This document shows, one piece after another, positions 9,184 through 12,899 of a stretch of 64,000 nucleotides of DNA. Both the position numbers and the translations under genes were made by a program. The DNA comes from Mizuhopecten yessoensis. Lineage: Eukaryota. The notes beneath the pieces were generated by a model. The model was not told the DNA's origin. It made no database searches and worked only from the letters and a program-made list of their open reading frames with translations. The stretch is taken from positions 1,093,396-1,157,395 of the forward strand of contig NW_018408915.1 of the NCBI RefSeq assembly GCF_002113885.1. Reading direction: 5' to 3'. The first letter of the stretch is position 1, and each line of letters starts with the position of its first letter.

Positions 9184-11170
9184 AGATCAGAAGATGGTAA
9201 GCTATCATTTGAATGAAGTCGTATCTGTAAAAAATACGTTTGTAAATCAAAATGGATTTGTTAAAGGCAGTCTCAAATCTTGTCTGAAGTTTTGGAAAAC
9301 ATGTCTAAAAGCTAGGGATTATGTCTGTAGTGTAGTTGAATATGGGTATTTAATTCCGTTTATTGTGGAACCTGAGTCGAAAATAATGAAAAATAATAAG
9401 TCGGCGCTTACGCATAGTACTTTTGTCAGTGACGCTATTTCTGAATTGCTCGCGAGCGGTGTAGTAGATGAGTGTGTGTCGCCTCCCTACGTAATTAACC
9501 CACTGTCGGTTTCTGTTAACAGTAAGGGCAAGAAAAGACTTATTTTAGATCTAAGATACGTCAATCAGTATGTAGCAAAACAAAAGTTTAAACTAGAGGG
9601 TAGCAGAGAAGCACTAGAATACGTACAACAGGGGTTTTTCGGATTTAAATTTGATTTAAAGTCAGGATATCACCATATTGAAATGCATCCAGATCACATA
9701 AAGTTTTTGGGGTTTTCTTGGACAGTTGGAAATAAAGTGAAAAATTTCGTTTTTAAATGTTTACCGTTTGGCTTGTCTTCGGCGCCACATATTTTTACGA
9801 AAATGTTGAGGCCTCTAGTCAAAAAGTGGCGGTCGGAAGGTCACATGATGATCGTTTACCTTGACGACGGGTTAGGAGTTGCCCAGTCAATTTCTGCTGC
9901 GAAAACTTTATCTGATATGGTTCGTTCCGATTTGTTGTGCGCTGGTTTCGCACCGAATCATGAGAAAAGCGTCTGGACGCCAGTACAGAAATTAGAGTGG
10001 CTAGGTTTCATATGGGACTTTGTAGGCGGTGTAATAGAAATAAGTGTCTGTAAAAGATCTGAGATTAAAAACTTGGCTAATGAGCTCATCGGTGAGACGA
10101 GCGCAGTATCCGCGCGTGCCGTAGCTGTTTTTACAGGTAAGGTCATATCCGTGTCGCTTAGCCTGGGACGCGTATGTAATTTTCATACGAGGGAGTTACA
10201 CAAGTGTATATGTCACCGTACCTCTTGGGATTCGCCGATGTGCCTGTCAGATCAAGCTTTGCATGAGTTGCAATTTTGGGAGCTAAATGTCCTTAGTTTA
10301 CCTCCGAGTATATTCAACCTTAACACACACGCAGTTGACCACGATCTTCATATCTTTACTGACGCTAGCGCTATCGCGGGCGCAGGCTACTGTGTTGAGC
10401 TAAACGAGCACATCTCTCACGTCATGTGGAATAAAGATGAGTCCGGGCAAAGTTCTACTTGGCGAGAAATTAAAGCAGTAGAGCACACTTTATTAAGTTT
10501 TGGACAAATTTTGGCCAATAAATCGGTGTTACTTTGCACCGATAATCAGAATGTGCCCCGTATATTAGAGAAGGGAAGCATGTGTATATACTTAGACAGG
10601 ATGGCAGTGAGCGTGTTCGAATTCCTCAAATCAAATAACGTGTCTTTGTCTATACAATGGATTCCCAGGGGATCTAATGTTTTAGCTGATCATTTTAGTA
10701 AGATCTTTGATTTTGACGATTGGGCAGTAGAGGAGAGTACATTTTTGTATTTTGATAGAATATGGGGCAAATACACCTGTGATCTTTTCGCAGATAACAA
10801 CAACAAAAAAGTCACGTGTTTCTTTTCAAAGTACGCTTGCGTAGGTTCAGCTGGAGTAAATGCGTTTGATTTTGATTGGTCCAAATTTAACTGCTGGGCG
10901 GTTCCACCCATTTACCTCATCGCTAGAACTGTCAATCATTTCCTGAGGTGTAGAGCGCACGGGACTTTGGTCGTGCCTCATTGGCCATCGGCGGCCTTTT
11001 GGCCTTTGTTGTCATTCAGGGGTGGTAAATCATTCAAGCCGTTTGTTATGGAATGTGCTTATTTTGTAAAACCCGCCAGTTTTTTCCGTGCAGGTTCCCA
11101 CTCTGAAAGTATTTTTGCAGAGAAAGTCTTCCATTCCAACGTGTGTGTTTTAAGAATAGATTGTCGGTAA
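8744..11170 (+). CDS. pol: Reverse transcriptase / RNase H / adenine-methyltransferase-like polyprotein
   Basis: 808-aa intact ORF; RLILDLR, DLKSGYHH, LPFGLSSAP, YLDD, WLG; RNase H TDAS..REIKA..TDNQ..N.LAD; MTase-like DLFAD..VNAF..WAVPP..VVPHWP. Confidence 0.95.
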   Translation: MVGTRLLSTKMTLFVTTLMILLSCVRLRPEHRGNGRQNLLAVIRISRMNVQVLGGEAEATRGTSIFFEAFKVLEKWESSLSTPKEERLTEVCLERPGVSIPPQQDRSTNKTRPVSTATGPDTGPATARGESEPPQPTPRVSPQSNNEDQKMVSYHLNEVVSVKNTFVNQNGFVKGSLKSCLKFWKTCLKARDYVCSVVEYGYLIPFIVEPESKIMKNNKSALTHSTFVSDAISELLASGVVDECVSPPYVINPLSVSVNSKGKKRLILDLRYVNQYVAKQKFKLEGSREALEYVQQGFFGFKFDLKSGYHHIEMHPDHIKFLGFSWTVGNKVKNFVFKCLPFGLSSAPHIFTKMLRPLVKKWRSEGHMMIVYLDDGLGVAQSISAAKTLSDMVRSDLLCAGFAPNHEKSVWTPVQKLEWLGFIWDFVGGVIEISVCKRSEIKNLANELIGETSAVSARAVAVFTGKVISVSLSLGRVCNFHTRELHKCICHRTSWDSPMCLSDQALHELQFWELNVLSLPPSIFNLNTHAVDHDLHIFTDASAIAGAGYCVELNEHISHVMWNKDESGQSSTWREIKAVEHTLLSFGQILANKSVLLCTDNQNVPRILEKGSMCIYLDRMAVSVFEFLKSNNVSLSIQWIPRGSNVLADHFSKIFDFDDWAVEESTFLYFDRIWGKYTCDLFADNNNKKVTCFFSKYACVGSAGVNAFDFDWSKFNCWAVPPIYLIARTVNHFLRCRAHGTLVVPHWPSAAFWPLLSFRGGKSFKPFVMECAYFVKPASFFRAGSHSESIFAEKVFHSNVCVLRIDCR

Positions 11171-11272
11171 AAAAAAAATAAAAAAAAGTGTAAACATATT
11201 ATTTGCGGCGTCGAGTACCCGTACAGTTTTATACATTCATAGATTTTGTGTAACGTTAGGTTACTATAGTCA

Positions 11273-11692
11273 ATGATTATCACTTCAGTGTAAAATTATT
11301 AAAGATAGTAGGTGGTTATCATCTTTATGTACAGTTATGGTTGTATAAACCAGTGGTTGTCACTTCAGTGCAAATTTATTTAGTGTGATAGGTGGTTATC
11401 ACATTTATGTACCGTCATGGGTGTATAACCCAGTAGTTATCACTTCAGTGTAAATTTATTTAGTGTAATAGGTGGTTATCACCTTTATGTACCGTCATGG
11501 TTGTATAACCCAGTAGTTATCACTTCAGTGTAAATTTATTTAGCGTAATAGGTGGTTATCACCTTTATGTACCGTCATGGTGGTATAAACCAGTGGTTAT
11601 CACTTCAGTGTAAATTTATTTAGTGTAATAGGTGGTTATCACCGTTGTGTTACACTGGCATTTTTTAGTTTTGCGTATTCGGTGGTTATCGG
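11273..11692 (+). repeat. Internal tandem array: 80-bp unit x ~4.6, built from 11 GTGGTTATCAC-like cores with alternating 28/30-nt spacers
   Basis: CACTTCAGTG at 11281, 11361, 11441, 11521, 11601; cores start at 11273, 11312, 11353, 11392, 11433, 11472, 11513, 11552, 11593, 11632, 11682. Confidence 0.95.
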
Positions 11693-11972
11693 ATTAATGT
11701 AACATTACAACTAGACAATTGTTAGCACAGTTGGCAGTTTCATCAATTAGCGGAGTTATGAGGGTTTACTGGGTTAATAATTTTTGAAAATATATAGACA
11801 ATCCACAACGTTAGTAAGCTAAGTTTCAGATTGTGTTGGATCTTAATGTTAAAATTAATTTTTTTACTTATTTTTTTTTTTTTTACAGAACACTGTGTTA
11901 TTAGGGCCAGTTTGGTCAGAGGGTTGAGGATATGAAAGGCCATCCTTTGCTTTGTGAAGCAGCATCTAAATT

Positions 11973-12899
11973 GTGTTAAAGGCCAGCCATGCTTCTTCTA
12001 CAGACAAGCAATACTGTTCGAATTTCGCTAAATTTAAAGATTGGTGTCGTATTACGGGCCTGGGATATCTGCCCTCTAGAAGTAGTACAGTAGCCGTATA
12101 TTTGTCTTATTTGGTTCAACAGTCAGTCTCGGTATCTACCCTTAATTCACATTTCTATAGCATAAAGTGGCAACATGATTTCGCAGATTTGCCTAATCCA
12201 TGTACAGACAAGTTTGTTTTAAAATCTTTAGAAGGAGCTAAACGTATTCTTTCTAAGCCTATTTTTAAAAAATCTCCCATTTCTGTGGAACATATAGAGT
12301 CCATTTTTAGAAAGTACGGAAACTCGGAAAACGTTAAGGATTTACGGTTATGCACTTTGTGCATTTTAGGATTTGCAGGGTTTTTCAGATTCAGTGAACT
12401 AGTCGATTTAAAAATGTCAAATTGCGTTTTGAAAAGTTCACACCTTGAAATTACACTTGTTCATAGCAAAACAGATGTCTATCGTCAAGGCAACGTTGTG
12501 GTGATTGCGAAAACAGGGAAGAAAACTTGTCCAGTTGCTTGTTTTGTGAAATACATTACAGCTGCCGGGTTAAGTTTTGGTGCAGATTCATACATTTTCA
12601 GAGGTGTTTCCTTTTGTAAATCTACAGGAACATATAAGTTATGTAGTCGAAATCAAGCTCTTTCTTACACTAGAGTTAGTGAGAATTTTCTGGGCGCAAT
12701 TTCGGAAATTGGACTAAAAAAGTCAGAATTTGGTCTACATAGCTTGAGGGCTTGTGGCGCCGCTATAGCCGCTAACAATGGCATTTCAGAGAGATTATTT
12801 AAAGCACATGTCAGATGGGCCAGCGAGAAAGCAACGGATGGTTATGTTTTGGATGATCTTGATCATAAAATTTCTGTTTCCGCTAATCTTGGCATTTAA
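11973..12899 (+). CDS. Tyrosine recombinase (phage-integrase family) of the retrotransposon; true 5' end probably at acceptor 11889
   Basis: GFFRFSE (R), SKTD (K), HSLR (H-x-x-R), HVRW, DGY (Y); N-terminal STDKQY..F..WC core-binding region. Confidence 0.93.
   Translation: MLKASHASSTDKQYCSNFAKFKDWCRITGLGYLPSRSSTVAVYLSYLVQQSVSVSTLNSHFYSIKWQHDFADLPNPCTDKFVLKSLEGAKRILSKPIFKKSPISVEHIESIFRKYGNSENVKDLRLCTLCILGFAGFFRFSELVDLKMSNCVLKSSHLEITLVHSKTDVYRQGNVVVIAKTGKKTCPVACFVKYITAAGLSFGADSYIFRGVSFCKSTGTYKLCSRNQALSYTRVSENFLGAISEIGLKKSEFGLHSLRACGAAIAANNGISERLFKAHVRWASEKATDGYVLDDLDHKISVSANLGI

What the first reader, a model, noticed from the sequence alone, without database searches (positions are those of the whole stretch)
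9194..11975. Predicted intron that removes pol and the array to express the recombinase
Seen: a strong donor ATG|GTAAGC at 9197, 13 nt after the gag stop and in the pol frame; a strong acceptor (long T-run)ACAG at 11888. The YR ORF has no ATG of its own. A phase-0 splice joins ..EDQKM to NTVLLGPVWSE, in frame with the YR ORF (11973-11889 = 84 nt). The 84 nt contain stops but read as a plausible YR N-terminus (VLLGPVWSE-VEDMKGHPLLCEAASKL) if two compensating indels are allowed. Inference: alternative splicing switches between RT and YR expression and would release an intron RNA containing the repeat array.
Basis: partly seen in the sequence, partly recalled or inferred. Interest (0 to 1): 0.7.

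Follow-up and report, generated by a model that had tools for sequence, protein, structure and literature searches.

The report
Pol-skipping intron in scallop retrotransposon
A jumping gene of the Yesso scallop very probably uses RNA splicing to cut out its reverse-transcriptase gene and so switch to making its recombinase, a retrovirus-like trick I found no description of for this class of elements; the copy in this window, however, has a broken recombinase gene.

Summary
The sequence features are real. ATG|GTAAGC sits 13 nt after the gag stop (ATG 9194-9196, intron from 9197). A long T-run plus ACAG ends at 11888. The window lies in Mizuhopecten yessoensis, in a 4.84-kb tyrosine-recombinase (DIRS-order, PAT-like) retrotransposon, 8203-13045, with about 10 copies.

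Every other copy, and RNA and DNA contigs from four runs, lack one G of the run 11921-11923 and carry 7 more nt after 11971.

The claim "no ATG of its own" is wrong for the family: copies with an open frame have an in-frame ATG 42 nt after the acceptor.

The splice itself is well supported, but only indirectly:
- An NCBI scallop protein (339 aa) begins M+NTVLLGPVWSEVED, exactly the predicted product.
- Gene models in oyster, mussel, another scallop and a brittle star show the same pol-skipping intron.
- A sister family keeps ATG|GTAAG after its gag stop.
- About 20 related families or loci have an AG preceded by a mostly pyrimidine-rich stretch exactly where recombinase conservation begins.
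- Donor and acceptor phases co-vary between clades.

No junction contig was seen in three RNA runs, and raw reads were not available. I judge it a probable, conserved, undescribed expression switch. This copy cannot make recombinase.

The parts
8203..13045 (+). One copy of a 4,843-bp tyrosine-recombinase retrotransposon (gag, pol, array, YR). It sits in an intron of a host multicopper-oxidase gene, in the same orientation.
   Evidence: Ends defined by about 10 other copies at 96-99% identity, by flank comparison and by loose ends at 8201/8206 and 13045 in DNA contigs.
8203..8331 (+). Left terminal segment 'A', which recurs directly after segment B in other copies.
   Evidence: B-A junctions and 556-bp A-X-B units lie downstream of the full copies on C4383, C5585, C2421 and C76718.
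8359..9183 (+). gag ORF, 274 aa, with a CCHC zinc knuckle at 9079-9126.
   Evidence: zf-CCHC, E 0.0017, below Pfam's cut-off; the C-x2-C-x4-H-x4-C pattern is visible.
8735..9196 (+). Proposed exon-1 reading frame: the pol frame, open for 154 codons across the 3' half of gag, with in-frame ATGs at 8744, 8774, 8798, 8885 and 9194.
   Evidence: codon-shuffle p 0.02 here; 0.0065, 0.006 and 0.065 in three relatives.
9194..9196 (+). ATG that opens the recognisable pol protein and is the last codon of the proposed exon 1.
   Evidence: It is the only in-frame ATG left in the 5'-truncated copy that carries the NCBI model.
9197..9202 (+). Proposed 5' splice site, GTAAGC.
   Evidence: 4.9 bits. Identical in 6 other copies. 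ATG|GTAAGA lies at the same place in sister family C1510. An X1 RNA contig ends exactly at 9196.
9197..11888 (+). Proposed intron, 2,692 nt: all of pol except its first codon, plus the spacer with the repeat array.
   Evidence: Inferred from the NCBI protein P0001 and from homologous introns in L057, L058, L059 and L060. Not seen as a junction contig.
9194..11170 (+). pol ORF, 658 aa: reverse transcriptase (9524-10012), an RNase H region, and a Dam-like methyltransferase domain (10715-10936).
   Evidence: RVT_1 E 2e-16; Dam E 5e-6, just under Pfam's cut-off.
11277..11650 (+). Tandem array, 80-nt unit x 4.7, with the core GGTTATCAC about every 40 nt.
   Evidence: Arrays with unrelated units lie at the same place in relatives.
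11859..11888 (+). Pyrimidine tract and proposed 3' splice site (ACAG ends at 11888). A TTAAT branch-point candidate lies at 11855-11859 (read by eye).
   Evidence: tract length varies between copies; ACAG is kept in the seven copies that cover it. The position is conserved across about 20 related families or loci.
11889..11972 (+). Start of the proposed exon 2. It is broken in this copy by one surplus G in the run 11921-11923 and a 7-nt gap after 11971. The family's internal ATG corresponds to 11932-11934.
   Evidence: (table 4).
11973..12899 (+). Remainder of the tyrosine-recombinase ORF (308 codons; Phage_integrase match at 12339-12848).
   Evidence: E 4e-5. 93% identical to P0001.
12921..13045 (+). 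Right terminal segment 'B'.

Best explanation
The window holds one copy of a young DIRS-order (PAT-like) tyrosine-recombinase retrotransposon of Mizuhopecten yessoensis.

Proposed mechanism:
- The full-length RNA serves gag and pol.
- A fraction of it is spliced from the GTAAGC donor at 9197, 13 nt after the gag stop and directly behind the first pol codon, to the T-run/ACAG acceptor ending at 11888.
- This removes 2,692 nt: all of pol and the repeat array.
- The recombinase (YR) ORF then follows exon 1 in the pol reading frame. Whatever brings ribosomes into that frame now makes YR instead of Pol. That could be reinitiation at ATG 9194 just after the gag stop, initiation at an upstream in-frame ATG such as 8744, or a +1 shift out of gag.

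What is shown:
- the sites;
- their positional conservation;
- phase compatibility of donor and acceptor;
- annotated proteins with exactly this junction.

What is inferred:
- that the junction is used in vivo;
- that it is the main route to YR;
- how exon 1 is translated.

The window copy itself has intact gag and pol, but its YR exon is frame-broken at two places. It could make YR neither by splicing nor from the internal ATG.
For: 1. Scallop gene model. NCBI protein P0001 (LOC110467217, 339 aa) begins M+NTVLLGPVWSEVEDMKGHP. Residues 2-339 map at 100% to C5585 and C4383, starting at the base after ACAG, and the codon before is CAG, so the M comes from another exon. Its contig length, 1,477,344, identifies C5585. 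In that 5'-truncated copy the only in-frame ATG upstream of the donor is the one at ATG|GTAAGC, which gives exactly 339 aa.

2. Gene models in other species.
- Saccostrea cucullata (P0023 on L057) and Mytilus edulis (P0012 on L058) have exon 1 in the pol frame overlapping gag. It ends at GAA|GTTGAGTA (10 nt after the gag stop) and AAA|GTTGAGTA (7 nt after it). The intron takes out all of pol. Exon 2 starts at TAG|/CAG| with VRSVWTEI.. and DSATWREI.., homologous to ..GPVWSEV...
- The architecture is the same in Pecten maximus and in the brittle star Amphiura filiformis, where the junction is a canonical GT-AG in phase 2.

3. Sister family in this genome. C1510 (55% aa identity) has its gag stop, then 16 nt later GATATG|GTAAGA, within an otherwise unconserved pol N-terminus.

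4. Acceptors. About 20 related families or loci have an AG (mostly CAG or TAG, usually behind a pyrimidine-rich stretch) exactly where YR protein conservation begins. Many have an in-frame stop just upstream, and several have no ATG.

5. Phase co-variation. Clade A (window, C1510, mussel, oyster) is phase 0/0. Clade B (C4688, C4928, C76684, C1993) is phase 1/1.

6. RNA contig graph. In RNA run X1 one contig ends at 9196 and the next starts at 9167. This 30-nt overlap is what a graph branch at the donor would give. No copy polymorphism in the assembly explains it.

7. Transcription. Host exons have zero depth in the three RNA runs while the element is covered.
Against: - No 9196^11889 joint was listed in the contigs of three RNA runs. 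Unspliced contigs cross the donor (X3, X12) and the acceptor (X3). Contigs drop rare forms, so this shows that unspliced RNA is present, not that spliced RNA is absent.
- I could not see what evidence the NCBI models rest on. They could be partly ab initio.
- Copies with an open frame have their own in-frame ATG 14 codons after the acceptor.
- The donor is only moderate by a generic matrix, at 4.9 bits.
- In five related families no donor of 4 bits or more lay in the scanned window. One degenerate copy (L055) has mismatched phases.
- The Pecten maximus model's junction is 1 nt off a clean in-frame GT-AG.
- In the spliced RNA, YR would still lie behind the 274-codon gag ORF, so a second, untested translation step is needed.
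Confidence: 0.72

Rival explanations
1. YR is translated from its own ATG (window equivalent 11932) on unspliced RNA or on a subgenomic RNA started in the spacer or array. The donor and acceptor are incidental look-alikes, and the gene models are annotation artefacts.
For: Copies with an open frame have an in-frame ATG giving a 324-aa YR. The Ostrea model P0009 starts at the equivalent Met. RNA contigs are unspliced at both sites. In X1 the depth drops in 11630-11828 but is high over YR, which an internal start would also produce.
Against: Several relatives have no ATG between the upstream stop and the conserved YR start, and none for more than 40 codons after it. Protein conservation starts at the acceptor, 14 codons before the internal Met. 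Models in five species share the pol-skipping intron. Donor and acceptor phases co-vary. ATGGTAAG is kept in an otherwise diverged region of the sister family.
Confidence: 0.17
2. Pol and YR are made as one chain or by recoding (stop read-through or frameshift from pol into YR), without splicing.
For: In one distant family (C4688, L047) pol and YR are in the same frame, separated by one stop and 11 codons.
Against: In the window there are 717 nt with many stops in all frames between the pol stop (11170) and 11889. In other families pol and YR are in different frames.
Confidence: 0.03
3. The sites are used, but only as aberrant or host-driven splicing (the element lies in host introns), with no role in the element's life cycle.
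For: This copy and others sit in host introns. The C5585 copy is transcribed together with its upstream flank.
Against: The position and phase of both sites are conserved across families with 35-55% protein identity and across species. That is not expected without selection in the element itself.
Confidence: 0.08

Closest known systems
Retroviral env expression from singly spliced genomic RNA (e.g. MuLV; PMC5778647)
   Same: One primary transcript. The unspliced form serves gag-pol and replication. A splice removes gag-pol sequence so that a 3' ORF can be translated.
   Different: Here the donor lies after gag, not in the leader, so gag stays on the spliced RNA. The 3' ORF is a tyrosine recombinase, not an envelope. 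The element is not an LTR element or a virus.
Rice tungro bacilliform virus ORF IV (splicing fuses a leader uORF to the distal ORF; PMC5902531, citing Futterer 1994)
   Same: A long intron is removed so that a short upstream reading frame, with its start codon, is joined in frame to a distal ORF.
   Different: RTBV is a plant pararetrovirus and its donor lies in a leader uORF. Here exon 1 is the pol frame that overlaps gag, and the ATG at the donor is only one possible start.
Ty1/Copia alternative splicing that yields a gag-only subgenomic RNA (PMC5580714); Drosophila copia (own knowledge)
   Same: A conserved alternative splice inside a retrotransposon that sets the ratio of its products.
   Different: In copia the splice and premature termination raise Gag. 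Here the splice skips pol to reach a separate downstream enzyme gene.
DIRS1-like and PAT-like tyrosine-recombinase retrotransposons (PMC3266345; PMC7192593)
   Same: Domain set of gag, RT/RNase H, Dam-like methyltransferase and YR. No DDE integrase. Direct-repeat-type termini as in PAT-like elements. Mollusc elements without long pol/YR overlap.
   Different: I found no native intron or spliced YR mRNA described for this order in the searchable library. DIRS-1 work used only an engineered marker intron.

Membership tests
DIRS-order (tyrosine-recombinase) retrotransposon | Reverse transcriptase of the Ty3/gypsy-like type in a pol ORF | tested here: met
   RVT_1, E 2.2e-16, 60.6 bits, above the cut-off.
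DIRS-order (tyrosine-recombinase) retrotransposon | Tyrosine recombinase instead of a DDE integrase | tested here: met
   Phage_integrase, E 3.9e-5 (23.9 bits, cut-off 27.1) on the window copy. Relatives carry PF00589. The motifs HSLR..GG and H.RW..Y are visible.
DIRS-order (tyrosine-recombinase) retrotransposon | gag-like ORF upstream | tested here: met
   274-aa ORF with a CCHC knuckle. Homologous gag lies in related elements.
PAT-like / DIRS1-like (as against Ngaro/VIPER) | Methyltransferase-like domain at the pol C-terminus | tested here: inconclusive
   Dam (PF05869), E 5.3e-6, 26.7 bits against a cut-off of 28.1. The same weak hit appears on the related L031 pol.
DIRS1-like | Inverted terminal repeats plus an internal complementary region | tested here: not met
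   No inverted repeat joins 8203-8331 and 12921-13045. The ends recur as direct B-A junctions.
PAT-like | Split direct repeats (A1-internal-B1-A2-B2) | tested here: inconclusive
   Other copies show B1-A2-X-B2, with about 300 bp of unrelated X and up to three such units in tandem. The window copy ends at B1. No phylogeny with reference PAT elements was made.
Spliceosomal GT-AG intron | GT donor and AG acceptor with a pyrimidine tract | tested here: met
   GTAAGC at 9197; T-run plus ACAG ending at 11888.
Spliceosomal GT-AG intron | Exon-exon junction present in RNA | tested here: inconclusive
   No joint in the contigs of 3 RNA runs, though one contig ends exactly at 9196 in X1. Annotated proteins in 5 species imply the junction. 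Raw reads were not available.
Spliceosomal GT-AG intron | Sites and phase conserved in diverged relatives | tested here: met
   phase 0/0, 1/1 and 2/2 classes, with one mismatch in a degenerate copy.

The most novel reading that the evidence does not exclude
A pol-spanning intron is an old, conserved part of the life cycle of a large clade of DIRS-order retrotransposons (bivalves, and at least one echinoderm). Splicing is their normal switch from Pol to recombinase synthesis. The recombinase is made as a fusion to the gag-overlapping exon-1 frame. The spacer arrays lie in the intron so that only unspliced RNA carries cis signals for packaging or reverse transcription. This last point would explain why no intron-less DNA copies are seen.
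Probability: 0.35. Interest if true: 0.75.

Novelty: new variant of a known kind. Interest (0 to 1): 0.62.

Why it matters
How DIRS-order elements express their recombinase, and in what ratio to Gag and Pol, is essentially unknown. Work on the model element DIRS-1 does not address it.

A conserved, phase-preserving intron that skips pol would give these elements a retrovirus-like two-RNA expression programme. It would explain why many of their recombinase ORFs lack a start codon.

It would also explain the 'integrase/recombinase xerD homolog' genes with odd N-termini that annotation pipelines call in mollusc and echinoderm genomes. The idea is directly testable with ordinary RT-PCR or long-read cDNA.

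Tried and rejected
- Joined model. I did not build or search the joined (spliced) sequence. Exons were searched separately by reference, so I made no pattern search for intron-less DNA copies. I only saw that none of the genomic hits or DNA-run joints has a 9196-to-11889 jump.
- Read laying gave contigs only, no raw reads, and no junction was listed. I treat this as no evidence either way.
- The look-up of encoding contigs found nothing for P0001 or P0106; own-genome records and shorter isoforms are not on record.
- A gag-based protein search for Gag-YR fusion proteins returned only gag-only or gag-RT proteins.
- A search with the sister family's YR found no scallop model for it.
- The hairpin idea for the arrays did not hold up. 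The fold z-score is -3.0 for the window array but 0.0 for the C1510 array, so I make no structural claim.
- I considered the motif AAGATAAGTA ('NKIS') as an odd donor and rejected it, because its phases do not fit the acceptors.
- Literature searches for native splicing in DIRS, PAT or Ngaro elements found none. The older subscription papers by Goodwin and Poulter are not in the library.
- Earlier scan notes on this genome concern Cryptons and other elements, not this one.
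Full report
WHAT IS THERE

The window comes from Mizuhopecten yessoensis. The best protein hit is an NCBI protein of that species, and the assembly has 987.6 Mb in 82,659 contigs.

Positions 8203-13045 (+) are one copy of a 4,843-bp retrotransposon. About 10 copies, 96-99% identical, are present in the genome (a DNA run shows about 141x depth over the element against about 14x over the flanks). Its parts are:
- gag, 8359-9183, with a CCHC knuckle;
- pol, ATG 9194 to stop 11170, with RVT_1 and a Dam-like methyltransferase hit;
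- an 80-nt x 4.7 tandem array, 11277-11650;
- a tyrosine-recombinase (YR) ORF ending at 12899.

The ends are not inverted repeats. Segment B (12921-13045) is followed directly by segment A (8203-8331) in other copies, with short 556-bp A-X-B units in tandem behind them. This resembles the split direct repeats of PAT-like elements (PMC3266345).

The copy lies in an intron of a multicopper-oxidase gene.

THE OBSERVATION

The donor is aag ATG|GTAAGC, with ATG at 9194-9196 and the intron starting at 9197, 13 nt after the gag stop and in the pol frame. The acceptor is a T-run plus ACAG ending at 11888, so exon 2 would start at 11889, in frame with the YR ORF 84 nt further on.

The 84 nt hold three stops in this copy. 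Aligning the region from eight other loci shows why. Every other copy that covers the place lacks one G of the run 11921-11923 and has 7 more nt after 11971. Contigs of one DNA run and of two to three RNA runs show the same two differences; X12 has no contig at the G run (table 4).

In the other copies the frame is open from the acceptor onward and reads NTVLLGPVWSEVEDMKGHPLL... It contains an in-frame ATG (window equivalent 11932-11934) from which YR is 324 aa in three loci. So 'no ATG of its own' holds for this damaged copy only. The copy cannot make YR by either route, although its gag and pol frames are open.

IS THE SPLICE REAL?

Direct RNA evidence is thin. Only Logan contigs were on offer, not raw reads.

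In three RNA runs the host exons have zero depth while the element is covered, so the element is transcribed. Contigs run unspliced through the donor (X3, X12) and through the acceptor (X3), and no 9196^11889 joint was listed. The tool itself warns that contigs show presence, not absence.

One detail fits a splice. In run X1 a contig ends exactly at 9196 and the next begins at 9167. A 30-nt overlap ending on the last exon base is what a branch in a 31-mer graph would leave. This is my inference. No copy in the assembly differs at 9166 or 9197.

INDIRECT EVIDENCE

1. The scallop gene model.
- The NCBI protein LOC110467217 (P0001, 339 aa) begins M-NTVLLGPVWSEVEDMKGHP.
- Residues 2-339 map at 100% to C5585 and C4383, starting at the base after ACAG. 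The preceding codon is CAG, so the Met comes from another exon.
- The contig length on record, 1,477,344, is that of C5585.
- That copy is 5'-truncated at window-equivalent 8910. In it the pol frame upstream of the donor contains exactly one ATG, the one in ATG|GTAAGC.
- Exon 1 ending there therefore yields exactly 1 + 338 = 339 aa.

2. Gene models in other species.
- Models in Saccostrea cucullata (P0023 on L057) and Mytilus edulis (P0012 on L058) have the same architecture inside related elements. Exon 1 is the pol frame overlapping the 3' half of gag. It ends at GAA|GTTGAGTA (10 nt after the gag stop) and AAA|GTTGAGTA (7 nt after it).
- The intron, 2.2-2.6 kb, removes the whole of pol. Exon 2 starts after TTTAG| or TACAG| with VRSVWTEIQEMKK and DSATWREISQF, homologous to the scallop ..GPVWSEVEDMK, in phase 0.
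- Pecten maximus (L059) shows the same layout, though its junction is 1 nt off a clean in-frame GT-AG.
- The brittle star Amphiura filiformis (L060) has a canonical CAG|GTAATT...TGCAG| junction in phase 2 that also skips pol.
- Magallana gigas and Tegillarca models join donors inside RT to the same YR exon.

3. The sister family. Within the scallop genome, family C1510 (55% aa identity) has its gag stop, then 16 nt, then GATATG|GTAAGA, in an otherwise unconserved pol N-terminus. Two degenerate relatives keep CCG|GTAAG at that place.

4. Acceptors. In every related family I fetched, about 20 loci with YR identity of 34-55%, an AG (mostly CAG or TAG, usually behind a pyrimidine-rich stretch) lies exactly where YR protein conservation starts. 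Most have an in-frame stop a few codons upstream. In several (C76644, C4688, C76684, C1993, C942 and others) there is no ATG before it, and none for more than 40 codons after it.

5. Phase.
- The window, C1510, mussel and oyster pair a phase-0 donor with a phase-0 acceptor.
- In a second clade gag and pol form one ORF and YR begins GLGL. There the best donor between the zinc knuckle and the conserved pol motif is phase 1, and so is the acceptor (C4688, C4928, C76684, C1993).
- One degenerate copy (L055) mismatches. In five families no donor of 4 bits or more lay in the scanned window.
- A change of phase on both sides is the kind of co-variation expected of a real intron.

HOW IT MOST LIKELY WORKS

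Unspliced RNA is the genomic RNA and the message for gag and pol. A spliced fraction lacks 9197-11888 and carries gag, then 13 nt, then YR in the pol frame. The route that normally feeds ribosomes into pol then produces YR.

Which route that is remains open. The ATG at the donor has a good context (A at -3, G at +4) and lies 10 nt after the gag stop, which fits reinitiation.

However, mussel and oyster elements have no ATG at the donor. The pol frame is open for 154, 182, 130 and 91 codons upstream of the donor in four lineages. This is more than codon-shuffled gag allows (p 0.02, 0.0065, 0.006, 0.065). That points to translation entering this frame further upstream, from an internal ATG or a +1 shift out of gag, since pol lies in the gag+1 frame in both scallop families (my arithmetic).

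The presence of the internal Met in this family means that a start there, on any RNA, cannot be excluded.

Tandem arrays of unrelated sequence recur in the same spacer in relatives: 33 nt x 9 in C1510, 27 nt x 11 in Mytilus, 38 nt x 2.7 in L031. No intron-less DNA copies were seen. This would fit cis signals confined to the intron, but that is speculation. Folding gave no consistent signal.

COMPARISON WITH WHAT IS KNOWN

Splicing to reach a 3' gene is standard in retroviruses (env; PMC5778647). It also occurs in RTBV, where a leader uORF is fused to ORF IV (PMC5902531). Ty1/Copia elements use it to make a gag-only RNA (PMC5580714).

For DIRS-order elements I found no report of a native intron or a spliced YR message; the DIRS-1 work used an engineered intron only. 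Older subscription papers could not be searched. I therefore rate this a new variant of a known kind.

RULES FOLLOWED

Exons were searched separately by reference. N stretches (for example in C981) were left as they are.

VERDICT

- Observation: confirmed.
- Interpretation: partly supported. The splice and the indels hold; 'no own ATG' does not; the role of the intron RNA is untested.
- Probability that the splice is real and used for YR expression: about 0.7.
- This particular copy is recombinase-defective.

Noticed in passing
window 6013-7965 and about 13290-13475: Host multicopper-oxidase gene (Cu-oxidase_3, Cu-oxidase, Cu-oxidase_2). A long exon ends at aag|gtaagt (7965). A probable last exon encodes a transmembrane tail. 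The retrotransposon lies in the intron between them, in the same orientation. None of the three RNA runs covered these exons.
   Followed up: partly
window 11277-11650; L037:4619-4917; L058:10493-10788; L031:2849-2957: A tandem array occupies the pol-YR spacer in four related families, with unrelated units (80, 33, 27 and 38 nt), each with a short palindrome. None is present in the Saccostrea element. Copy number differs between scallop copies. Function unknown.
   Followed up: partly
L044 (C4383:439915-441583); also C5585, C2421, C76718, C5587: Full-length copies are followed by one to three 556-bp units A-X-B that share only the element's two ends, joined head to tail through an 8-nt overlap. 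These look like short non-autonomous partners, or products of recombinase-mediated insertion at the B|A junction.
   Followed up: partly
window 8735-9196; L037:1613-2158; L058:7986-8375; L057:7995-8267: The pol frame stays open for 91-182 codons across the 3' half of gag in four lineages (codon-shuffle p 0.006-0.065). The encoded peptides are S/P/T/Q-rich and not alike. This suggests translation enters this frame well upstream of the gag stop.
   Followed up: partly
L051, L052, L053, L054, L055, L045, L046 (scallop families); P0124-P0128 (other bivalves): A nucleotide and peptide motif, AAGATAAGTA / (N)KIS, is conserved about 15-20 codons after the gag zinc knuckle in many families. It aligns with the window's AAGATG|GTAAGC region, but its phase does not fit the acceptors. 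Unexplained.
   Followed up: partly
L059:8361-8366 and 10912-10917 (Pecten maximus): The NCBI model P0051 joins ..AATTCA to GATATT... The nearest canonical pair (GTTAAGT...ACAG) is 1 nt out of frame with it, so either the model carries a correction or the junction is non-canonical.
   Followed up: no
P0106, P0097, P0082 (Magallana gigas); P0155 (Tegillarca granosa): Annotated isoforms join donors inside the RT/RNase H region to the same YR exon. This suggests several alternative donors, or domesticated or decayed copies.
   Followed up: no
window about 11921, run X1 (table 4): In RNA run X1 about a fifth of the depth at 11921 lacks the 1-nt difference. A contig with the window copy's own G-run variant may thus be transcribed, so the variant would be real rather than an assembly slip.
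   Followed up: no
C5585 copy (L043), window equivalent 8910: This copy is 5'-truncated at 8910. An X12 RNA contig carries its upstream flank, so it is transcribed by read-through from outside the element. It is the copy that bears the NCBI gene model.
   Followed up: yes
G000:C4518:555148-555774, C76290:5063-5710, C5494:1197587-1197937: YR-like matches lie inside very long open frames (1555, 1385 and 960 aa). These may be fused or domesticated recombinase genes.
   Followed up: no
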